This document shows, in pieces, positions 10,508 to 39,137 of a DNA stretch of 64,000 nucleotides. The stretch's first letter is position 1; each line of letters opens with the position of its first letter. Below the pieces are notes generated by a model. That model was given only the letters and a program-made list of their open reading frames with translations. It ran no database searches and had not been told where the DNA came from. The DNA is taken from contig NC_135251.1 of the NCBI RefSeq assembly GCF_964204865.1, positions 14,322,001-14,386,000 of the forward strand, read 5' to 3'. A program made the translations under genes and the position numbers. Source of the DNA: Styela clava (lineage: Eukaryota).

Positions 10508-12922
10508 TTATTTAAAATAGTAAGCAAGAATGGCAAATATTGCAACCAGTATAATTAAATACAAATTATTGAACAAATAAGATTGATTGCTGCGTTCGTG
10601 CTTCTCCAATGATTTTTGAATTTGTGACAATTTCAACAAAATATGTTGTTGTTGCTCTTGTAGTGACAGTAACGTTTGTTTAGCATCCTCGTCCGCTTGT
10701 AATTTGACTTGCAAAGCTTCGTCATTACTTCTATTGGTCGATTCTTCCATAATTTTAACGCTCTGTATCATGTTTTCATTGTCAACAATCATTCGAGATT
10801 TGCCTGGTGATCTTAGTATAACCCCATTTTTAGTCACAGTAGATATACACCCGTCAGATTCATATTGCACAATGTCATTAACAGTGTCCCAAGGTCGTTT
10901 GTCCAAAAACTTGTACGTCCAATTCTCATTTATTGGATTGTATTCAAAAAGTTTTGGCAGCCAAAGTGTGTCTGTTTTTGCTCTTTCTCGAGCTCCCTTT
11001 CTTTGGTTTTCTTCCAGAATACATTTATATTTTGTGGCTTCATTTTGATCACCAACTTCAATTGCTTTCGTAACATGGCACCAAAGTTTTTGAGATTCAT
11101 TCGGTAGCTGCTGGTTCATGGCAATGACTTGCCTTTGCAACCTAGCTGCACGGATTTCAGGAGTAGGTTTCCAGAATATTGATGTTGTGGCACGCTTCAA
11201 ATCAGTGAGATATATTTCTCTATCCCAAAATCCTTGAATAGTAGCAAGATTCTTTTTCCCATGTAATATACGTCCGTTTATTCTATTGGATGAATCACTT
11301 CCACCAAAGAATGGTTTCAATTTATATTCTATTTCAGTGGTGTAGCCTGTCTTCTGACAAGTAATATCAACTTTTCCTCCAAACTCCATCGTCATAGAAC
11401 CATATAAAAATCCTTTGCAATGTGCATATGGCATTGTCAAAATGTATTCTTCCCTTTTATTTAGAAGAGTGAGGCTTACAGTACCATCAAGAAAAGCAGA
11501 TAAAGAGTTGCCATAAAATTTAGATTTTGCTAATATGCTTCCATGCACAACGAAGCCGTCTTTTTTATTCACAGCTGCAAATGCCGAAATGGGTGGATGA
11601 TGACTCACTTGTTCAGCAATATAATGTGTGAAACTTTCAGTTTCAGGATGTTGCCATTTGCAACGAAAAATTTCACCAATTATGGGGTTATATGGTTTTT
11701 TTATGCCATCAGGTTTTTTGTAGAAACCTGAAAGATACCATTTTGCAACAGCTTTCATTCGTTCATAAGGGTCGTCGACCCTGGCAGCTTTTGATAACAA
11801 ATCAGCATGAAAGTAGTAATCTGACAATTTATCAAGGAAGGAACGAGGTTCTAAAATGAAAGTAGGAAGAACAACTTTAGAAAGATCCATTCCAGGTCGT
11901 AATTGTTTCAAGATTGTCCAAATTAGCCCTTTATTTTCACTAGCTATGTCTTCAGCTGCCTCACCAGCAGATCCTAACTCTTCCATGTCAGTCTTTTCAA
12001 GCACATATTCAGACTCTGGAACTTTGGGTAAAGATTTGTTGCTTTCAGCATCAGATGACACCCTTGAACTGAAGGAGCCAGTTTCCTCACCAGATGTTAC
12101 AAGAGCTTCGTTTTGACCTACAGTGAGATGATTACCATGGCTTTTAGATGGATCTTCACTAGACTGATCTCCAGCATCCAATTGACTACCATCATCAGTT
12201 GATTTTTCACTGTGTGCTTTACTTGGCTTACGTTTCAGTAAAGCTAATTCAAGTCCCTCATCATATGAGTCCCGATCGTCCCCCATGACACTATCAATCT
12301 CTTTCATGCTGACGTCACCTACTGAAAGGGTGTTTTGAGAATCAAGAGTTGGCATAGCTTTTTTCAATAGATTGGAACATTTACGGGCCAGCTCTAATGC
12401 ATCCATCCAGCATTGGCCATCAGATTGAGTTGTTGATCTCAAAATTAGGTGATTTGATGGCAAAGAATGTGTCAATAAACTCATGCTTTCGCCCGAGGGC
12501 CCTTTGGCAGTCCAAATCACTTGGTCAAGAGGATGATAAATTTTGAAACAAAACCCTTCCTTTTTTGATGGTCTTTGAATAATTTCACTCGACGTTAAAA
12601 GAACTGTTCCGATCCATTGCTTCAGTTTTTGAGTTTTGTATAATATTAGCACTCCTGGTTTTAAAACACACCATATTCGACTCCAGTTCTTTAATGTACT
12701 TCGTATTTTCAACCAATCAGAGCGAATTACAACGGTTGGATCTTGTATTGTATTTTTCAACTCATTGTGAACTTTCTTTTTCTCCACCTTATACGACTGT
12801 TTCTGAATTCTCAATGATTCTTTTTTAGTGAGATTAGACCTAATGCTTGCATGACTGGAATCCTGCTCCCAGCTGTTGCTGCTGAACGAGTTGTTGTACG
12901 ATGGAAGATTTTTGTCAGTCAT
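10508..12922 (-). CDS. OSBPL8: Oxysterol-binding protein-related protein 5/8 (PH domain, ORD, C-terminal transmembrane anchor), single coding exon, 804 aa
   Basis: Uninterrupted ORF with KKESLRIQKQSY, a PH domain (WLKIRSTLKNWSRIWCVLKPG), ORD motifs (GMDLSKVVLPTFILEPRSFL, KKPYNPIIGE, EQVSHHPP), a coiled coil and a hydrophobic C-terminus (LYLIILVAIFAILAYYFK). Confidence 0.95.
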   Translation of the reverse strand: MTDKNLPSYNNSFSSNSWEQDSSHASIRSNLTKKESLRIQKQSYKVEKKKVHNELKNTIQDPTVVIRSDWLKIRSTLKNWSRIWCVLKPGVLILYKTQKLKQWIGTVLLTSSEIIQRPSKKEGFCFKIYHPLDQVIWTAKGPSGESMSLLTHSLPSNHLILRSTTQSDGQCWMDALELARKCSNLLKKAMPTLDSQNTLSVGDVSMKEIDSVMGDDRDSYDEGLELALLKRKPSKAHSEKSTDDGSQLDAGDQSSEDPSKSHGNHLTVGQNEALVTSGEETGSFSSRVSSDAESNKSLPKVPESEYVLEKTDMEELGSAGEAAEDIASENKGLIWTILKQLRPGMDLSKVVLPTFILEPRSFLDKLSDYYFHADLLSKAARVDDPYERMKAVAKWYLSGFYKKPDGIKKPYNPIIGEIFRCKWQHPETESFTHYIAEQVSHHPPISAFAAVNKKDGFVVHGSILAKSKFYGNSLSAFLDGTVSLTLLNKREEYILTMPYAHCKGFLYGSMTMEFGGKVDITCQKTGYTTEIEYKLKPFFGGSDSSNRINGRILHGKKNLATIQGFWDREIYLTDLKRATTSIFWKPTPEIRAARLQRQVIAMNQQLPNESQKLWCHVTKAIEVGDQNEATKYKCILEENQRKGARERAKTDTLWLPKLFEYNPINENWTYKFLDKRPWDTVNDIVQYESDGCISTVTKNGVILRSPGKSRMIVDNENMIQSVKIMEESTNRSNDEALQVKLQADEDAKQTLLSLQEQQQHILLKLSQIQKSLEKHERSNQSYLFNNLYLIILVAIFAILAYYFK

Positions 12923-29001: not shown

Positions 29002-29517
29002 ATGGATTCAACATCGAGACATAGACGACATCACAGTACTGAAAATGTTACTCACAAATCAAAAAATAAAGGCATTTTAGTATCTGGAGGCCAATCTCGT
29101 AAACGGCCAGGTTCTGAATCAGACATATTAGAAATGCCTCATGAATCTTCTTTACAGCACCAAGACTCTATTCAACTAGCTTACCACCACAGGCCAACAT
29201 TTGCTGCTTTAAAAGGCAGCACAACAGGTGCAGGACGACACATAAAACCAGTTTATATTTGGACAAAGGATGAAGTCCAGAAATGGGTTAAACGACATGC
29301 GCCAAGATCTTATGAGAAATATTCGAGCAAAATGATTGAACATGAAATCACTGGGCGGGCTTTAATTTCACTCAATGATGCTAAACTAACAAGAATGGGA
29401 ATGGTAGAGCCTGAGATTCGAAATGAACTTGTTACAGAAATACTAAAACTAAGATTGAAAAGTTATATGCAATGCTTCAAAGGCTTAGAAGGTGCCGGCA
29501 TGTTCGAAGTTATGTGA
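29002..29517 (+). CDS. SAMD12: SAM-domain protein of the SAMD12/SAMD10/aveugle family, single coding exon, 171 aa
   Basis: C-terminal SAM domain KPVYIWTKDEVQKWVKRH...HEITGRALISLNDAKLTRMGM...RNELVTEILKLRLK, typical of aveugle/SAMD12. Confidence 0.85.
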   Translation: MDSTSRHRRHHSTENVTHKSKNKGILVSGGQSRKRPGSESDILEMPHESSLQHQDSIQLAYHHRPTFAALKGSTTGAGRHIKPVYIWTKDEVQKWVKRHAPRSYEKYSSKMIEHEITGRALISLNDAKLTRMGMVEPEIRNELVTEILKLRLKSYMQCFKGLEGAGMFEVM

Positions 29518-30210: not shown

Positions 30211-31113
30211 TTGTGTTTTGTCAATTTATGCTGATATATAGGCCCAGACTGTCTTGTAAAGGAGCGATTTTCACTTACTGTTATAATTGATGTGGGAGCA
30301 ATTCTCGGAATCGAAGAACTGTGCCATACTAATATTATTTGATTTTTTAATCATGGTCTCTTAAATTTCAAAACACCTGTTTAGTTATAATATTTTTGAT
30401 ATTTCTTGCATGCTACATAATTTAAACATGCCAAGATACTGTGATTCTATTACAGACAATCACTTTATTTGCTAAGGTAATCTAATTGCGCCACATTGAG
30501 TTTGGTGTCCACATATTAGGAAGAGGTGACTGGTCACAGTCCTGGGTATATGTCAAGTCAAGTTTATTTTTTCTGTATGCCTAAATGAATTCCTGCTTTG
30601 ATTTAATTATAGTTTATGCATATCAACATGTGGCAATGCTTGGAGACCTCAGTAGATTAAGTGTTAAGAATTATTTACAAGAAATTTTTGACTTGTATGT
30701 AGAAATCAAATATTTTGTTGTAACATTCTCAGTGACACTTTGTAATTTGTATGTACCAATTTGTGACTTGTACTATCCTACTTTTAAAATTATCTCTTAC
30801 AAGTTTTGAAGTACCGGTAGCTATTTTTATGTAAGAATACGTGAGAGGTTTCTATTTTATAATATTTGAATTTAATGGTACTTATATGGCCAATACATTT
30901 ATTTTTGTAGACATGCAATTTGTTTACTCCGAAATATATATTTAAATATAAAGTTTTGACAAATTTGCACAATTATTTGGATACATTTTTGTCATATAAA
31001 TCCGTCCACTGCACTGGCATGTTTATAATTTACTACTAACTTCATATATCTTTATAATCCTGTTTTTGTTGATTTTCACAGACCAATATCATATAAAAAT
31101 CTTCAACATATAT

Positions 31114-31959
31114 ATGGATTTATCTGGTGGTCAGGAACATACAGCAGTCACAATAAATCCTGATGTTTTCTATCATTTGAAAGAAGAAGGCTTTAAATAC
31201 ACTTTGTTTAATGTGGAAGGTCCAGGTTGTGATGAAAATCCGGCTCTGATTAAGTTTGAAGGATGTGGCTGTACTGTTTTAAGTTGTTCTGAAGAAAACT
31301 GCCAATGCAATTTAAAAAATTATGAAAACTCAAAACTTAGACAATCGAACCCATTCACTTCACCTCCGATTTATGAATGTAACTCAATGTGTAAATGCAG
31401 TGATGCATGTGAAAATAGACTCGTGCAACATGGTGTTAAAACAAGACTTGAAGTATGTAATATTCAATATAAAGGAAAGGGTGTTAAATGTTTGGAGAAC
31501 ATTGAAAAAGGAAGATTCGTTTGTGAATATGCTGGAGAGGTATTGGGATATGAAGAGGCAGTAAAAAGGACTAAGAATCAGTGTTCAAAAATTGGTGTAA
31601 TGAATTACATTATATCAGTATGTGAATATAACTCAAATCCAAATGAAAAACCGCACAAAGTAACTTTTGTAGATCCAAAATATATTGGAAACGTTGGGAG
31701 ATTTATTAACCATAGCTGTGACCCAAATCTTGTAATGGTTCCAGTACGGGTAGACTCCGATGTTCCACATCTTGCACTTTTTGCCTGCAAAGACATTGAA
31801 GTCAATTCGGAGATCACATTCAACTATGCGGGAAACTGCAAATCTGATTTTATTGACAATTCAAATGCAAATCAACAAAACCAAAAGCCATGTTATTGCG
31901 GTGCAATATCTTGTCAAAAATATCTTCCCTTCGACAGCACTTCATTAAGAACCGAATAA
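31114..31959 (+). CDS. SETMAR: SETMAR-type histone lysine methyltransferase (pre-SET/SET/post-SET) with no mariner transposase domain; single coding exon
   Basis: MDLSGGQE start, pre-SET Cys cluster (GCGC...CQC...IYECNSMCKCSDACENRLVQHG), KGKGV, FVCEYAGEV, GNVGRFINHSCDPNL, EITFNY and post-SET CYCGAISC. Acceptor ttttcacag| at 31081 precedes ATG 31114. Confidence 0.88.
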   Translation: MDLSGGQEHTAVTINPDVFYHLKEEGFKYTLFNVEGPGCDENPALIKFEGCGCTVLSCSEENCQCNLKNYENSKLRQSNPFTSPPIYECNSMCKCSDACENRLVQHGVKTRLEVCNIQYKGKGVKCLENIEKGRFVCEYAGEVLGYEEAVKRTKNQCSKIGVMNYIISVCEYNSNPNEKPHKVTFVDPKYIGNVGRFINHSCDPNLVMVPVRVDSDVPHLALFACKDIEVNSEITFNYAGNCKSDFIDNSNANQQNQKPCYCGAISCQKYLPFDSTSLRTE

Positions 31960-32027
31960 ATATTTTACATTCATTTCAGTTTCAGATATAGGTTAATAGT
32001 TATAATTATTTATGCGCCGCTGAAGAG

Positions 32028-35000
32028 ATGGGTTTGTGTAAATGCCCAAAGAGAAAAGTAACAAATTTGTTTTGTTTCGAACACAGAGTCAATGTTTGTG
32101 AACATTGTCTTGTAGAAAATCATGCCAGGGTAAGGATTATATTATATTTGCCAGAATTAGTTTCCCTTCCCTATTATTGCTTCTCACAACCATCCGTTTT
32201 CCATCTTAAAAAATCAAAATCACAACCAGAGCACATTTGCGATATATTATAGTGCAGGATACATATACAAGTTCATGTAATACAGAAAATCTTTATACAA
32301 AACCCATTATATACAAAAAGGGATTTATGACTCATAATTTTAAATTTTCAGTGTGTTGTGCAATCTTATCTCAATTGGTTGAAAGACAGTGACTACAACC
32401 CAGATTGTCAACTTTGCAGTAAACCTCTTGCCTCTGGAAATGTCGTCAGATTACTCTGTTATGGTAAGTTGTTTTTTAATCTTTGCCTTAGACCTAAGGT
32501 CACTTCCCATTAGCATTATTGGCAGTTTCATCAAGCATTATCTTACAAATTCTTTCAGATGTGTTTCATGAAGCCTGCCTAGATAGACATTACAAAAAAC
32601 TGCCATCAAACACTGCTCCAGCTGGTTATAAATGTCGATTATGTGAGACCAATGTTTTTCCTGCACCAAACCAAGCTGGAAAAGTCATTGACCAATTGAA
32701 AGAATGTCTTTCAAAATTTAACTGGGCAAGAATTGGACTTGGGTTGCCTTTGGTGAGTTGTTAGATCGGGAATTATAATTTAAATGCACCAAATGCGGGG
32801 CAGTGAGTTCTACATAGTCAAACTTGTGGTATCTTGAAAATTGGAACTGGAATACATTTTTTTCTAGTTTGGTATGGACTTTGGAGCCTGTTTGAACAGC
32901 TTCGAATAGTATGAAAAAGCCATGATTAAATAATGACTGGGTGTGACATATTTTGGGCCCTTGACAATGAATGATTGGCATAATTTTAAGTTAAATCAGA
33001 AATATAAATTTTTAATATTCCCTCAGGTCATTTTCATTAGACTTAGCATATTAGAATATGTGTGTCATTCCTTCGTGATTGCTTCCATTCAAACCTGCAC
33101 AGGGCTGGGGGCTGGTTCGAAATCACAATGACTCCGACTCCCCAGTCCTGCACCCGCGTTTCAAAACTTTGTGATAAAAGCTTATCCAATAATATGTACC
33201 ATGTTCAGATAGATGAGTCAGAGGTTATCGAAGTACCAGAAAGTGATTTACCAGAAGATGAAATGTCTGGAGTAAATACATTTGTTAAAGATGAAGGACA
33301 AAGTCGAGAGCATGAAAATCTACACGGATCATCAATACTCAAACCTGATTTTAATCTTTCATCAAGCACAAATGTATCAGACACATCTTGGATGAAGGTA
33401 TTTCTCTTTCAATATACATTATGAACATTTTAGTTTGATATGCTATTGAATTGATTAATTCATTTGCTATTCTTTTAGATCAGGGGTGGGCAAGGTTTTT
33501 GGACGAGGGGCCAAAAATTTTGCCACCCTGACTGGCGGGCTATGTAAGTGTGAAATAGAAAGTTGACTGTCTTGAAAGTTTTTAAATTACGAATAGAATT
33601 TACCGATACCAATACCATATTTAGTTTGTACGTGTTATAGATGTATATTAAATAGAGTGAAAGAAAACTTAAACAAACACTTATAAAAACAAAGCAAACC
33701 TGGTTAAATATATTGAGAACAGACTTTATGCGAAATTGTAAGAGGCTTTATGATCACTCCAGCTGTCTTTTTCAGTAGCTATACAGTATGTGCAGTGAGG
33801 GTTTTATATATTGCACGCCAATACTCCTATTATTATATAAAAAATCAATACGGATAATCCAATGACATCTGATTAATGGCTCTGCATCGACTCCCTTTGT
33901 TTGGTTGTATTATGCCTCAATACGATATGTTCTTTATTTAAGAATTCATCTCTATTTGCTGACTACAGTCCTCCAAACAACAAATCACACAGTACAGTTT
34001 TAACAATGGACGACTTCCCAGCCACTGGAGGTAGGTTTTCTAATCAATTTTAGGTAAATGATATTTTCTATAATCAAAGAGCAAAAGGGAGTATAGGTTA
34101 CCAAGGTCAGAATGATTTTCTATTCCAAATATATCCAAAAAAAAAAAATTACTGTGGTTTTCTATCTTTTGCAATACATTCCCCCTTCACATATTTGTCT
34201 CCCTCAGTATATATGAAAATCATTTTTTATTTGTTGTTTAATTTTTGGTCGCGATATGCACAACTCTTGCTCTGACTTTTCTACAATTTTAATTGTTTTC
34301 AATGTGTTCATAAATATCACAAAATAAGAGTAATACTACAAGCAAGAACAAAGTAAAAGTTCCTCTGCTTAAACAATTAAACTCCACCTTCGAGGGAAAT
34401 TCCTCTCTAGCTGTGAAACCCCTGAATATTGCATATAATGTATTCTATGTTGGGTTTTGTTCAATAGAGGAACAGCAATCCTATTCATTTGTCAATTGCA
34501 CAAAATTACAATTCATCAGATAAAATGTTTTAAATTGTTCCTGATATCGTGAATATGTTTGAATGTTTTCGAGTACCAGTATTCGACTCATTTTGGGCAT
34601 CCCTGTTTATTACTTTTTCAAAATATATTTCTAGATCAAAATGACTGATGAAATAGTGGTTTCAACAAGTATTTTTTAATCAAGACGCTATCAATTTGAT
34701 AGTTTGCAAATCTTGCAGCCTCCGAACCTGCAGTAGTTTCTGAATAGTACCAGATTGAAGCGTGCTATTCCAGTTCAAACCTTGTCAGATCAAAATAAAT
34801 GAATATGATTTTATGAAAGTGTTTGTGTACTGAAAATATCGTTATGGCTGTTAGCAATTCACTCATTTTCAATCCTGGAAATCGTGCTCTACAGGTTCTA
34901 AAGTAGCAGATGAGCTGGGAGCAGTATCTAGAAAACTTCTTGGGGGCAATTTACCAGATTCATTGAGACAGACAGTCGCTGGAAATGATCCAGATTCCGA

Positions 35001-35889
35001 AGATAAATATAAACGAAGACCTGCGTGGACATGGTTAATGAGGTGGTTGAGGTAAAAAACATTTCTATTTTATTGATAGCAAACAGTCTGGTCAAAATTT
35101 TTTTTCGATGTGGAAGCCAGGGTCATAAATAGGAAGTAGTGTTCCATCACAATAAGGAGTGCTTTATTGCAGGGGCCAGTTATCATTGACATCAACTTTT
35201 TTAAAAGAACAGCTGGCTGAAAAAAGTTGAATAACAGTTGGTCGTGATTGGCAGACGTTTGGTGACAAGTACATTATGAAATGTATCAACCCAGAGATAG
35301 TTATGCTTGAAGGATTTTGTGAAAAAATGAGCCAACCCCAGAAGAAAGAAAATAGGCTTAGCCGCCCAATAACACAACCCCAGAAAATTATGTAAAAAAA
35401 TTGGGTCCAAAAAATCGTCTTATTAGCCTGAAAATGTGGTACTTGAATTTATCTGTCATCTTTGTATCTCGAGTGTTGAAGAATAAGGAAACAATTAACT
35501 GTACTGATATTTGAGAATTTAAGCCCTTTCTCTTTCTCTTAAATGCTCTCACTTTAATTGACAACTTTATTTCATTCAGGTCACGCATGTTGAGAGCAAG
35601 AGGCAGAGGCTATCACGATATGAATGTTATTCCAAAAAAAGTCGCAATATTAATTTTGGTGGCAATCATAGCCTTTTTCACAATTGTTATTTTTGCAACA
35701 CAAGTAGGACGAAAAAGAGCAGAAGAAAATCCATTTCTAGACCCGATGGCTAATCCTAATATCCACGTTGCTCATCATGGTGACGCTGGTTTAGACTATG
35801 GTGGGGGAAAGATAAGACAAGGGCAGGCTTTTTTGAGTGATGATAAAGAAGAGAACATTGGTTTTGTAGGTAGAAGACAAAAATTATAG
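32028..35889 (+). CDS. ZFPL1: Zinc finger protein-like 1 (B-box/RING-like fingers, C-terminal transmembrane segment)
   Basis: Exons 32028-32129, 32352-32463, 32559-32752, 33209-33397, 34635-34668 (inferred microexon), 34895-35051 and 35580-35889. Motifs: [73 protein letters not shown], a TM segment and [14 protein letters not shown]. Confidence 0.93.
33481..34028. mobile_element. hAT-like MITE in a ZFPL1 intron
   Basis: Termini caggggtgggcaagg ... cttcccagccactg. Confidence 0.5.
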
Positions 35890-37486
35890 TATTATTCTAC
35901 AACTAAAATCTATGGTGCCAGTTACACAGTGTGAATTCTTGCACACCGGGTACTAGCTTTTGCTGTATTAACCATGTGTTATTATTATATGCACAGCGCA
36001 CATTTTTGCCGATACTGCTCTTTTTTTATGTGGGTGTTATGGGGAACAATATTTTATAAGAAGAATGATTGCCTGATGGGCAGTGTGCTTCAGCAACAGT
36101 TATTATGTGATTTGTATATTTTAAATATATTACATGATATATATGATCATCTGTATTATTATATGGTATTATTATATGAAAAGGCATTTGTGGGACCAAA
36201 CGACAGTGTGAAATTGCGATCATAGTACATACACCACACCAACATCTGTTGCAATGCCTCTCTCTACTGACAAAAATCATTTAGTCAACATTGCTGTTGT
36301 AACATGTTTTATTGAATCAGTAACAGAGATCAGATTTTAAAATTTCATTGCAATTTTAAGTTTGACAATGTGATTCGTTACACAAGAGAAATTTAATTGA
36401 ATGTTACAATAACTTTGATCGCATAATATCAGCAGTTTAAGAAAGAAATGTATGGATGGCGCAAAAGGTATACAAAATCGTCCCTCAGATTTTCAATCAC
36501 ATTTACACAATATAAACCTCCCGAGGGTGGGCAATTTTCTTTAAATTGGACAACGTTTCTCGGTAGGGCATAAATAAATTCATTTTGAGATTTGATGGAT
36601 TACTGAAAATAAACAAAAAAGTTTGTTTGCTCGTATATAGACAGAAATAAATAAAATCATTATGTTTTCAGCCATTAGATATTGCATAAAAGCTATGAGC
36701 AAGAACTTCTGAGTATATGAGTAATATTAATTTCATTTGCTGATTTCTACAAGTGCTAACTAAAAATAAGTTGGCACTTGAAGTTGATTGGATTGGCTAA
36801 GTCTTGGCCTGTTTTAACAGTCCCACAAGTTTTAGTCATAGGAAACTTGTATATTAATAATGAGCGGTGGCAAACAAATATTCTGTGGCGAATTATCACA
36901 GCAGTAAAATAGGTTAGATAATATGGTCGCGCCAGTAAAGAACTTCATCTCCTAGCGGAATGGATTTAAACAGAAATAACACAGAGAAACAAGAATATGT
37001 CCGATCTCAGCAGAAGAAAGAATCACATAATAAAACGGGGTCAAGATGGTCGGAGTCGAGCAAAAATGGTCAGTCCACAAAGAAACCTACGGGTTGGCCA
37101 CAAATCTATTGATTATAAATTGCTGAAGTTATTGATAGATTAGTTAAAACTTTGATTGTAGTAACAATGAATGATGATGCTGTTTCTGCTACTGGATGGA
37201 ATTCTTATTTTAATTATAAAAGTGTCTGTCTATATTTGCAACCTTGATATCACCGAATTTTTTGTGCAACAAAAGTGCGCCACAAAAGAAAAAAGGTTGA
37301 GAACCACTGGATCATTAGTCAAAATAATAGCTCCGACTCCGCAAACACTAAGACAAAATAAATAAATCAAAGAAAAGCGCTAAAAATTTTCACAGTTATC
37401 TTTACATAGTGGAATATAATATCTATATATGCCTTTGTTAAAGTCAGAATGTTATGCCATCTGTGTTTGTACATGAAATGTGAAAC

Positions 37487-38218
37487 TCAGGGCATCAACC
37501 TTTCATATACCCAACCATTTTCACCTTCTCTTAGACAAGGATTTGTAGTTACATTTTCATTAGATTCCCTTTTTCGAAATCTTAGTCGATCATGCATTCG
37601 ATTTGATTGCCCTTGCCAAAATTCGATACTTTCTGGCTTTACAATGTATCCTCCCCAATATTCCGGCTTTGGTACATCAACACCTTTATATCGTTTTTCA
37701 ATATCCTTTTCCACCTCAAGCAGTTTGTCTCTACTTTCAATTGGATAGCTCTGCTTGATGCTCACATGTGCAGCAATTTGGCTTTTTCTAGGTCTTGTGG
37801 AAAAATATTCAGTACTATTTGATGTTTCTATTTTCGTTGCTTTACCTTCAATCCTAACAGATCGATGCATTGTGTTCCAATAAAACATTAAAGCAACATT
37901 TGCATTTGTTGCCATCTCATTGGCTTTTCGGCTATTATAGTTTGTGTAAAATTTAAAACCATCATTATTAAATCCTTTCAATAAAACCATTCTGGAACTA
38001 GGTTTTCCATCACTACTTACAGTAGATAATGACATGGCATTAGCTTCTATTACTCCTTTGTGGGCAATAGCTTCGTTCATCCAAACTGCAAACTGTTTTA
38101 TGGGATCCGACGATTCCAAATGGTGTTCTAAAAATGTATCATCTGTCCCACGATAAGGGTGGCGCAAATGTGTGAGATTATTCTCTTCAACGCCATCGTT
38201 GTCCCCATAGCACGCCAT
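37487..38218 (-). CDS. PNPO: Pyridoxine/pyridoxamine 5'-phosphate oxidase, single coding exon (an in-frame upstream ATG lies at 38254)
   Basis: DPIKQFAVW, EANAMSLSTVSSDGKPSSRMVLLKG, FYTNYNSRK, RSVRIEG, YFSTRPRKSQI, EFWQGQSNRMHDRLRF and WVYERLMP. An acceptor (tttacag|) lies 5 nt before ATG 38218. Confidence 0.94.
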   Translation of the reverse strand: MACYGDNDGVEENNLTHLRHPYRGTDDTFLEHHLESSDPIKQFAVWMNEAIAHKGVIEANAMSLSTVSSDGKPSSRMVLLKGFNNDGFKFYTNYNSRKANEMATNANVALMFYWNTMHRSVRIEGKATKIETSNSTEYFSTRPRKSQIAAHVSIKQSYPIESRDKLLEVEKDIEKRYKGVDVPKPEYWGGYIVKPESIEFWQGQSNRMHDRLRFRKRESNENVTTNPCLREGENGWVYERLMP

Positions 38219-39137
38219 TCCAACTGTAAATTTTCTTATTGTCGTTTCGGGCATGTGGAAGGCCGCGAATAATTGTCGGCATCCGCCAAGCAGTAACTGG
38301 ACACGACAGGTCGCCAGCGCCAGTTTTATATTCAACAAAATCAATAATTAACAAAGGATAAACTCACAACGGACGGGGAATCACCAACTATCTACGAAGG
38401 CACCAATGGCATGGCATTGGAGGAGGCGCGTACATTGAGGGCACTCGTGACGCGGACGAGTCCCGCTGAACCCCAGTAAACTATGGCTGAACCAATACAC
38501 CTCAATGCGCTGAACCCAAAAAGGGTGTTATATACACCTCGATGGCTGAACCACAGTTCAGTGCACTGAACTAGAAATATTCACAGCTCTGTGACGAGTT
38601 CCAACGTAACCTGGAGGACAACGTAACGTAACTATTTTGCATTTCGATAACCCCTATCATATTTTCGAACGCGAAATGTACATATGGATCGTTTTCAAAT
38701 TTGTTGTTATTGTTAGTCTTTTTGGGATGCTTGCGGTTGTTATTTTTTAACTATTTATTATATTATATTATATACCTATTAATTATTTTAACTACCAGAC
38801 CAATCGATTATATAAACGGCCATTGAAGGATATTACATTTTTCAATTTTGTTTCCTAGTCCCGATATTTTCACCCATGATTTATTGAAATTCGGGTCACG
38901 TTTTTGGAACATTGAAATATGTCCAGATTTCCGCAAAGCAAAATTTTCCGAAACAAGAATAATTTGAACCAGAGTCAACAAACACTGGCATTCCCAGGAT
39001 TTCGTTAAGGTGTGGGTAATTGAATATTGAAATATCGTGACGTTAAATTTGAATTATTGAACACTAAATATTTATATGAAACGTTTTGCTAAATCGTTGT
39101 TGTTAGTCTTGTTGTTGGAGCGACTATTTGTTGACCC

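What the first reader, a model, noticed from the sequence alone, without database searches (positions are those of the whole stretch)
31950..32030. Near zero-spacer operon junction between SETMAR and ZFPL1
Seen: the SETMAR stop (TAA 31957-31959) is embedded in AATAAA (31955-31960). Two TTTCAG acceptors follow at 31979 and 31985, where cleavage would be expected, and the ZFPL1 ATG is at 32028. Only 68 bp separate the ORFs, leaving no room for a promoter, and no donor is evident. Known: ascidian (Ciona) operons are resolved by SL trans-splicing, with the upstream poly(A) site abutting the downstream trans-splice acceptor. Inference: a polycistronic pre-mRNA co-expresses a histone methyltransferase and a Golgi zinc-finger protein, and the SETMAR mRNA has an almost absent 3' UTR.
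Basis: partly seen in the sequence, partly recalled or inferred. Interest (0 to 1): 0.75.

Follow-up and report, generated by a model that had tools for sequence, protein, structure and literature searches.

The report
Sea-squirt SETMAR-ZFPL1 operon junction
In the sea squirt Styela clava a histone-methyltransferase gene ends 20 bases before the splice site where the next gene's message begins, which is most likely an ordinary example of the trans-spliced gene chains already known from sea squirts.

Summary
The genes are a single-exon SETMAR orthologue and a 7-exon ZFPL1. The genome is Styela clava or a very close relative, not Ciona.

RNA contigs from 4 runs in 3 studies show:
- The ZFPL1 message reaches exactly the first TTTCAG acceptor in 2 of 4 runs, with 4-6 further letters.
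- In 0 of 4 runs is the acceptor joined to an upstream exon.
- SETMAR itself begins at an acceptor (31081|31082), and an upstream transcript ends at that same point.

The genome holds at least 1,015 tandem spliced-leader genes ending ...TATTTGATTAAG|GT.

The best reading is one junction of a Ciona-type operon with no intercistronic DNA, probably SAMD12-like, then SETMAR, then ZFPL1.

Three things were not seen: the leader's letters on these RNAs, SETMAR's poly(A) site, and any RNA bridging the junction. In 0 of 4 runs does a contig cover 31944-31973.

The pairing is absent from the other ZFPL1 loci I could fetch. The scan has already noted many such pairs elsewhere in this genome. This is a new member of a known kind, of modest interest.

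The parts
29002..29517 (+). SAMD12-like / aveugle-like gene, a 171-aa single ORF; probable first gene of the unit
   Evidence: Pfam SAM_2, 1.9e-8. Homologues are named SAMD12-like [Ciona intestinalis] and protein aveugle-like [Clavelina], 45-47% identity over 96% of the query.
30400..31081 (+). Abundant non-coding transcript, taken to be the long 3' UTR of the SAMD12-like gene; it ends at the AG of the SETMAR acceptor
   Evidence: contigs: X5 rec11 to 31037, X1 to 30991, X2 to 30973, X6 rec15 to 31082 plus 4 unaligned letters. No Rfam family.
31060..31081 (+). Pyrimidine tract and acceptor ttttcacAG of SETMAR; the exon starts at 31082
   Evidence: Sequence. X5 rec12 aligns from 31080 (the AG) with 9 more unaligned letters 5' of it. 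No AATAAA or ATTAAA lies in the 40 bases before it.
31114..31959 (+). SETMAR orthologue: SET part only, 281 aa, no intron, single copy
   Evidence: Pfam SET, 1.3e-21. Named SETMAR hits at 41-47% identity. In a 90% cluster with S. clava XP_039259512.1. One full match in the genome. RNA contigs in 4 of 4 runs.
31955..31960 (+). AATAAA poly(A) signal overlapping the SETMAR stop codon
   Evidence: It lies 19 bases before the AG at 31978-79. Its use was not observed.
31974..31979 (+). First TTTCAG, the acceptor that is used (junction 31979|31980); also the predicted SETMAR cleavage site
   Evidence: X5 rec13 aligns from 31978 with 4 unaligned letters; X6 rec17 aligns from 31974 directly behind an Illumina adapter. 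No joint from an upstream exon.
31980..31985 (+). Second TTTCAG; part of the ZFPL1 5' UTR in the contigs seen, and a possible alternative acceptor
   Evidence: The X5 and X6 contigs read through it. X5 has 0 mismatches over 31978-32128.
31980..32027 (+). ZFPL1 5' UTR (48 bases) with a 3-codon uORF at 32012-32023
32028..32129 (+). ZFPL1 exon 1 (coding part)
   Evidence: GT..AG joint in 4 of 4 runs; tblastn of P0133.
32352..32463 (+). ZFPL1 exon 2
32559..32752 (+). ZFPL1 exon 3
33209..33397 (+). ZFPL1 exon 4
33943..34030 (+). ZFPL1 exon 5
34895..35051 (+). ZFPL1 exon 6
35580..35889 (+). ZFPL1 exon 7, coding part, with stop TAG 35887-89. The exons sum to 383 codons plus the stop, equal to S. clava P0282
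35890..36142 (+). ZFPL1 3' UTR up to one observed poly(A) site; longer forms exist
   Evidence: X2 has a loose end at 36142 made of T, nine A and then adapter. The X1 and X5 contigs run on past 36399.

Best explanation
This is one junction of a Ciona-type, spliced-leader-resolved operon in Styela clava, probably SAMD12-like, then SETMAR, then ZFPL1.

The model is as follows. One promoter upstream makes a long pre-mRNA. At each junction the same 20-25 bases serve two machines. The first is cleavage and polyadenylation of the upstream message; here it would be directed by the AATAAA fused to the SETMAR stop, cutting at about 31979. The second is trans-splicing of the genome's spliced leader (...CGCTATTTGATTAAG) onto the unpaired acceptor TTTCAG|, so the ZFPL1 exon starts at 31980. 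No DNA lies between the two sites. The branch point and AG needed for trans-splicing therefore sit in the upstream message's tail, and one pre-mRNA molecule can probably yield SETMAR mRNA or ZFPL1 mRNA but not both.

Shown: the anatomy, the gene identities, spliced expression of ZFPL1, both genes' RNA starting at acceptors with no cis exon, an upstream transcript ending at the SETMAR acceptor, and the leader gene arrays.

Inferred: leader addition at these two sites, the SETMAR poly(A) site, co-transcription, and mutual exclusion (by analogy with Ciona).
For: - Anatomy.
- ZFPL1 5' ends: in 2 of 4 runs (2 studies) the ZFPL1 contig ends within 6 letters of the predicted junction. X5 rec13 aligns from 31978, the A of the AG, with 4 unaligned letters. 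X6 rec17 aligns from 31974 behind an adapter that lacks its last T.
- No cis exon: in 0 of 4 runs is there a joint into 31980 or 31986, while all 6 ZFPL1 introns are seen in 4 of 4 runs.
- Same picture at SETMAR, at an acceptor I had marked before laying reads. X5 rec12 aligns from the AG at 31080 with 9 unaligned letters. X6 rec15, from the upstream transcript, stops at 31082 with 4 unaligned letters.
- Fit to the leader: alignments that start at the A of an AG, followed by a few non-genomic letters, are what a leader ending in AAG predicts. All three leader genes in the 831-bp repeat unit end ATTAAG|GTAAG.
- Leader copy number: the 29-mer of leader plus donor has 1,013 forward and 2 reverse matches at 2 or fewer mismatches, against 0 and 0 for the control. 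They form arrays on C4, C6 and C7.
- Similarity to Ciona: the last 13 leader bases match the Ciona leader quoted in PMC7986045 at 12 of 13 positions.
- Precedent: Satou 2006 (PMC1488885; passages read) found Ciona operons with the upstream poly(A) site directly on the downstream acceptor, with no intercistronic DNA.
- No local source: no copy of the leader lies in the window (0 matches at 3 or fewer mismatches).
Against: - The leader's letters were never displayed. The loose-end table was cut (66 rows not shown), so the 4- and 9-letter overhangs could be something else, such as adapter tails.
- Depth arithmetic shows that no contig in any of 4 runs covers 31944-31973. SETMAR's 3' end and any bridging precursor are therefore unobserved.
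- All runs are Logan contigs, which cannot show starts, ends or strand. Their label as RNA is the tool's guess, although the skipped introns show they contain RNA.
- ZFPL1 contigs are far deeper (83-284) than SETMAR contigs (5-11), which an own promoter would also explain. The tool warns that contig depth cannot rank genes.
- The junction carries a canonical AATAAA, which 16 of 18 Ciona operon junctions lacked.
- The pair is not kept in the other ZFPL1 loci fetched.
Confidence: 0.65

Rival explanations
1. Overlapping but separate transcription units. ZFPL1 has its own promoter inside or just upstream of the SETMAR coding region. [quoted passage not shown] The tight spacing reflects genome compaction, not co-transcription.
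For: ZFPL1 contigs are 8- to 30-fold deeper than SETMAR contigs in all 4 runs (with the tool's caveat on depth). No bridging contig was seen. In Ciona most trans-spliced genes are monocistronic (PMC1488885). The pairing is not conserved.
Against: No transcript at ZFPL1-like depth begins inside SETMAR in any of 4 runs. The promoter would have to sit inside a conserved coding exon. The same zero-spacer picture recurs at the junction upstream. Different steady-state levels are expected anyway if processing of the two messages is mutually exclusive.
Confidence: 0.22
2. Conventional capped transcription start for ZFPL1 at about 31974-31980, with no spliced leader. The few extra letters on the contigs are adapter or library artefacts.
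For: X6 rec17 has an Illumina adapter directly before 31974, and X1 has one before 32046, so adapter-tailed contig ends do occur in these runs. The leader letters were not seen.
Against: The start would fall 14-20 bases after a poly(A) signal, exactly on a consensus acceptor, and the same would have to happen again at SETMAR (31080). The adapter overhangs seen elsewhere are 22-33 letters long, not 4 or 9. X5's 4 letters do not match the genome at 31974-77, or they would have been aligned.
Confidence: 0.06
3. Cis-splicing from a far-upstream shared first exon that lies outside the 6-kb stretch laid.
For: Overhangs at an acceptor are also what a distant exon would give. The scan has notes of shared-exon gene pairs in this genome (untested here).
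Against: A cis exon would let a contig of depth 284 run on for tens of bases, not stop after 4. No joint is listed in 4 runs.
Confidence: 0.03

Closest known systems
Ciona intestinalis SL-resolved operons without intercistronic DNA (Satou et al. 2006, PMC1488885; about 1,310 operons as cited in PMC7986045)
   Same: Same-strand neighbours less than 100 bases apart. The downstream gene starts at an unpaired acceptor. The upstream RNA ends at that acceptor's AG (seen here at the SAMD12-like/SETMAR junction). A single short leader comes from a tandem gene family of hundreds of copies. The member genes are functionally unrelated.
   Different: A different family of ascidians (a stolidobranch). The leader differs: 12 of the last 13 bases are shared, and the 5' part is different and longer. 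This junction has a canonical AATAAA, fused to the stop codon, which 16 of 18 Ciona junctions lacked. The acceptor is doubled. Direct proof (SL-tagged cDNA, dicistronic cDNA) is missing here.
Oikopleura dioica operons (as described in PMC1488885 and PMC7986045)
   Same: One leader serves both monocistronic and operon genes. Spacers are very short. The upstream cistrons lack AATAAA.
   Different: Oikopleura has 23-30 nt intercistronic spacers and a different leader. Here the spacer is predicted to be zero.
Caenorhabditis elegans SL1-type operons lacking intercistronic sequence (mentioned in PMC1488885)
   Same: The poly(A) site and the trans-splice site coincide, so the two products are thought to be mutually exclusive.
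   Different: A minor class in nematodes, which otherwise use a dedicated SL2 and spacers of about 100 nt. There is no evolutionary link.

Membership tests
Ciona-type SL-resolved operon | Neighbouring genes on one strand, less than 100 nt apart | tested here: met
   68 nt between the ORFs and 20 nt from stop to acceptor AG. Both genes are on the + strand.
Ciona-type SL-resolved operon | The downstream gene's mRNA carries the spliced leader at an acceptor on the boundary | tested here: inconclusive
   Contig 5' ends fall on the acceptor in 2 of 4 runs, with 4-6 extra letters. The alignment starts at the AG, as an AAG-ending leader predicts. The letters themselves were not shown.
Ciona-type SL-resolved operon | The acceptor is unpaired (no upstream cis donor) | tested here: met
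   None of the 8 listed joints in 4 runs enters 31980 or 31986.
Ciona-type SL-resolved operon | The upstream mRNA's poly(A) site lies on the acceptor | tested here: inconclusive
   SETMAR: no contig covers 31944-31973 in 4 of 4 runs. Junction upstream: X6 rec15 ends at 31082 plus 4 letters, on the SETMAR acceptor.
Ciona-type SL-resolved operon | An unresolved dicistronic RNA exists | tested here: inconclusive
   None found in 4 runs of contigs. Contigs drop rare forms, so this is not evidence of absence.
Ciona-type SL-resolved operon | The organism has SL RNA genes | tested here: met
   1,015 matches of leader plus donor against 0 for the control, in tandem arrays. Each gene has a donor GTAAG or GTGAG, a stem-loop and a U-run.
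SETMAR (SET-domain part) | SET domain with cysteine-rich flanks; best named relatives are SETMAR over the full length | tested here: met
   PF00856, 1.3e-21. Named hits in the top 120 are SETMAR, SETMR or unnamed proteins, at 41-47% identity and 87-100% coverage. No transposase part is present, as expected outside primates (recalled).
ZFPL1 | Full-length colinearity with named ZFPL1 proteins | tested here: met
   Seven exons align to P0133 residues 1-381. S. clava 'zinc finger protein-like 1' P0282 maps only to this locus.

The most novel reading that the evidence does not exclude
The locus may be a three-gene chain (SAMD12-like, SETMAR, ZFPL1) in which two kinds of zero-spacer junction sit side by side: one without a poly(A) signal, as in Ciona, and one with a canonical AATAAA fused to the stop codon, 19 bases before a doubled acceptor. 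If cleavage and trans-splicing truly compete for those same bases, the ratio of a chromatin enzyme to a Golgi protein is set after transcription by that competition. The pair of junctions would then be a natural experiment on how ascidian operons form upstream 3' ends, whether by CPSF cleavage or by the trans-splicing cut itself. Satou 2006 left that question open.
Probability: 0.3. Interest if true: 0.45.

Novelty: new member of a known kind. Interest (0 to 1): 0.27.

Why it matters
It adds one well-delimited junction, and probably a three-gene unit, to the evidence that a stolidobranch ascidian, Styela clava, has Ciona-style operons and its own spliced leader. My four searches of the held open literature listed no paper on operons or trans-splicing in Styela. 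The AATAAA-in-stop-codon junction next to a signal-less one gives a compact substrate for testing how upstream 3' ends are made in zero-spacer operons. It is not a new kind of system, and the gene pairing itself appears accidental.

Tried and rejected
1. The Ciona leader plus GT in the genome gave no exact hit. The large C3 array it found is a false lead: the motif is an ATTTGCAT octamer about 40 bases upstream of tandem tRNA genes.

2. TCTATTTGCAAC(G/A)AAG|GTA has 19 dispersed copies with identical flanks. It is probably a mobile element, not a leader gene.

3. I asked whether AATAAATAAA...TTTTCAG at 36646-36671 is a fourth junction. I rejected this. No + strand gene follows, and a PNPO gene converges on the minus strand. 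The motif pair is expected by chance.

4. I tried to link SETMAR and ZFPL1 in other species by equal contig lengths. SETMAR relatives lie on contigs of 3993, 3019, 16167 and 2560 nt. ZFPL1 relatives lie on contigs of 1353, 3125, 1414 and 1441 nt. None coincide, so there is no evidence either way.

5. JGI metagenome loci with ZFPL1 (6 loci) gave no SETMAR or SAMD12 match at E up to 1e-4. Nothing credible turned up in the 543 bases upstream in L023 or the 150 bases in L021 at E up to 50. In L022, L025 and L026 the upstream neighbour is a RIOX1-like gene.

6. I looked for retrocopies that might preserve a leader. There are none; both genes are single copy.

7. Rfam and a repeat search across the junction found nothing relevant.

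8. I did not build or search a joined (spliced) ZFPL1 model. Exon 3 was searched alone, and after that only full-length proteins returned by the tools were used.

9. Supplementary operon lists for Ciona (Satou 2006 Table S5; SLOPPR Additional file 3) were not opened. They could say whether the Ciona orthologues sit in operons.
Full report
**The observation.**
- The 297-codon open frame ends with TAA at 31957-31959, and that TAA lies inside AATAAA (31955-31960).
- TTTCAG stands twice in tandem (31974-31979 and 31980-31985).
- The next ATG that opens a conserved frame is at 32028, so 68 bases separate the two ORFs.

I add three details. A weak donor-like AG|GTTAAT lies at 31990-31997. A three-codon upstream ORF runs from ATG 32012 to TGA 32021-23.

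The motif pair alone is not significant. AATAAA followed within 8-30 bases by TTTCAG occurs 3 times in the window against 1.61 expected, and 21 of 100 shuffles gave at least 3. One of the three, at 36646-36671, has no + strand gene behind it. The doubled hexamer is rarer: 2 matches against 0.00 expected, and 0 of 100 shuffles reached 2.

**The genes and the organism.** The upstream ORF has a SET domain (PF00856, 1.3e-21). From its first ATG (31114) it gives 281 residues.
- Its named relatives among the best 120 hits are SETMAR/SETMR proteins of vertebrates, amphioxus and a crinoid, at 41-47% identity over 87-100% of the query.
- It sits in one 90%-identity cluster with XP_039259512.1, 'SETMAR-like [Styela clava]'.
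- That model is 18 residues longer. It starts at an ATG that reads CTG in the window, and it reads through the acceptor described below.

The downstream gene has seven exons.
- Exon 3, searched alone, found 284 relatives at E up to 0.001.
- The closest full-length one, P0133, aligns to all seven exons.
- Its relatives are named zinc finger protein-like 1, including S. clava P0282 (383 aa).
- P0282 maps only to this locus in the genome (7 of 7 matches).

SETMAR is also single copy and has no intron. The window is therefore from Styela clava or a very close relative. It lies at G000:C2:14322001-14386000. It is not from Ciona.

That ZFPL1 is a Golgi protein and that SETMAR methylates histone H3 is recalled, not tested here.

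**RNA evidence.** All are Logan contigs labelled 'RNA?' by the tool. They must contain RNA, because six GT..AG introns of ZFPL1 are skipped in 4 of 4 runs.

ZFPL1 5' end:
- X5 record 13 (depth 284) aligns from 31978, the A of the first acceptor's AG. It has 0 mismatches to 32128 and 4 further letters that fit nothing.
- X6 record 17 aligns from 31974, directly behind 22 letters of Illumina adapter that lack the adapter's final T.
- X2's contig begins at 32016, and X1's at 32046 behind an adapter.
- Among the 8 joints listed, none enters 31980 or 31986.

SETMAR:
- Contigs exist in 4 of 4 runs at low depth (4.6-10.8).
- X5 record 12 aligns from 31080, again the A of an AG (ttttcacAG, 31080-81). 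I had marked that site as a likely acceptor, before laying reads. The record has 9 further unaligned letters.

Upstream transcript:
- A more abundant transcript (depth 33-56) covers 30400 onward.
- It ends at 30973 (X2), 30991 (X1), 31037 (X5) and 31082 plus 4 unaligned letters (X6 record 15). The last of these is on the SETMAR acceptor.

**What one search does not show.** The loose-end table was truncated (66 rows not shown), so I never saw the letters of the 4- and 9-letter overhangs. I recomputed the 31800-31999 depth bin from the listed pieces, and the pieces account for all of it in every run. Hence no contig covers 31944-31973 in X1, 31880-32015 in X2, 31902-31977 in X5 or 31569-31973 in X6. 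SETMAR's stop codon, its 3' end and any RNA bridging the two genes are therefore unobserved. Contigs also cannot give strand, true ends or expression rank.

**The spliced leader.**
- The Ciona leader (quoted in PMC7986045) is absent as an exact match. Two look-alikes proved false: an octamer in front of a tRNA gene array, and a 19-copy dispersed element.
- An earlier scan note speaking of an AAG|GTA junction in leader gene arrays led me to a shorter pattern. That pattern found an array at C4:23289721-23483491.
- Its 831-bp unit holds three similar genes. Each has a conserved upstream block, a leader ending ATTAAG, a donor GTAAG, a stem-loop and a U-run.
- The 29-mer ATCATTATTCGCTATTTGATTAAGGTAAG has 1,013 forward and 2 reverse matches at 2 or fewer mismatches, against 0 and 0 for the control. 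They lie in arrays on C4, C6 (spacing about 490 bp) and C7 (about 502 bp).
- The last 13 leader bases equal the Ciona leader at 12 of 13 positions.
- A leader ending in AAG explains why both contigs align from the A of the acceptor's AG and then diverge. It also explains why X6's contig could be aligned back to 31974: the adapter's T plus TTAAG differs from the genomic TTTCAG at one base.
- The leader's 5' start was not mapped. No leader copy lies in the window.

**Interpretation.** Satou et al. 2006 (PMC1488885; passages read) showed that in Ciona operons the upstream poly(A) site sits directly on the downstream trans-splice acceptor, with no intercistronic DNA. They argued that one transcript may then give only one of the two mRNAs.

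The anatomy here matches at two successive junctions. At 31081|31082 an upstream transcript ends where SETMAR's RNA starts. At 31979|31980 ZFPL1's RNA starts 19 bases after SETMAR's AATAAA. The upstream ORF (29002-29517) is a complete SAMD12-like/aveugle-like gene.

I therefore read the locus as a probable three-gene operon, with confidence 0.65 for co-transcription. For leader addition to ZFPL1 at 31980 I put the confidence at about 0.85.

The main rival (0.22) is an internal promoter for ZFPL1 with an outron overlapping SETMAR. The much greater depth of ZFPL1 contigs fits it, but also fits competition between polyadenylation and trans-splicing. A plain transcription start (0.06) or a distant cis exon (0.03) fits poorly.

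**Differences from Ciona.** This junction has a canonical AATAAA, which 16 of 18 Ciona junctions lacked. The junction before SETMAR has none within 40 bases. The acceptor is doubled. In the contigs seen, the first copy is used.

**Conservation.** Six JGI metagenome or metatranscriptome loci encode ZFPL1 relatives, and none has SETMAR or a SAMD12-like gene.
- In L022, L025 and L026, ZFPL1 starts 65 bases after a RIOX1-like JmjC gene, with an acceptor-like cttgtttag 6 bases before the ATG.
- L022 carries four same-strand genes with tiny spacers.
- In L023 and L024 the 543 bases before ZFPL1 hold no SETMAR.

So ZFPL1 tends to be a downstream operon gene, but the SETMAR partnership is not shared. 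This argues against a functional reason for the pairing.

**Novelty.**
- Four literature searches returned no paper on operons or trans-splicing in Styela. I saw the listings only. Two of the four did not require the Styela term, and no listed paper in them held it.
- One search found no paper linking SETMAR and ZFPL1 in this sense.
- The kind of system is well known from Ciona.
- This scan already holds 115 notes mentioning operons in this genome, among them VMA21-SNX25 and PDSS2-COQ3, and notes on the leader gene arrays.

This is a new member of a known kind, of modest interest.

Noticed in passing
L022:1-4923 (JGI contig Ga0115102_10882530); also L025, L026: An intron-free contig carries four same-strand genes with spacers of 65-75 bases between the first three: a mitochondrial carrier, a RIOX1-like JmjC gene, ZFPL1 and a pelota-like gene. 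L025 and L026 show the same RIOX1-to-ZFPL1 junction with very short introns. It looks like an operon of another, possibly appendicularian-like, organism.
   Followed up: partly
window 32012-32023: A three-codon upstream ORF (ATG CGC CGC TGA) ends 4 bases before the ZFPL1 start codon. It would remain in the trans-spliced 5' UTR.
   Followed up: no
G000:C3:24847563-24961794 (L007): About 75 tandem tRNA genes, each preceded about 40 bases upstream by ATTCTATTTGCATAAG, which contains the octamer ATTTGCAT. This mimics the Ciona spliced leader and can mislead leader searches.
   Followed up: partly
G000, 19 dispersed sites (e.g. L010, L011): Identical copies of CCAATCTATTTGCAAC(G/A)AAGGTACGAAAAC with identical flanks of at least 80 bases, on 7 contigs, 8 of them clustered on C3:427596-836008. 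Probably a mobile element.
   Followed up: no
G000:C4:23289719-23483493; C6:19280203-19346437; C7:211 onward: Spliced-leader RNA gene arrays with different unit lengths (831, about 490 and about 502 bp) and donor variants (GTAAG on C4, GTGAG on C6 and C7). The C4 unit holds three diverged leader genes, and wider gaps interrupt the C4 array.
   Followed up: partly
window 37487-38344 (-): A pyridoxamine-phosphate oxidase (PNPO) gene converges on the ZFPL1 3' end. X5's ZFPL1 contig runs about 730 bases past 36399, so the two 3' UTRs may overlap.
   Followed up: no
window 36142 and 36646-36671: ZFPL1 seems to use several poly(A) sites. One is seen at 36142 in X2. X1's contig length suggests an end near 36684, just after AATAAATAAA.
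   Followed up: no
window 31060-31062: The NCBI S. clava SETMAR-like model starts 18 codons upstream, at an ATG that is CTG in this assembly, and reads through the trans-splice acceptor. It is probably an over-extended gene model.
   Followed up: partly
window 11635-11646: A second TTTCAGTTTCAG lies inside or beside an 804-codon minus-strand ORF region. It was not examined.
   Followed up: no
L021:1-160: An mRNA-like ZFPL1 contig from a metatranscriptome begins with TAAG, the last four bases shared by the Ciona and Styela leaders. This is too short to count as evidence.
   Followed up: no
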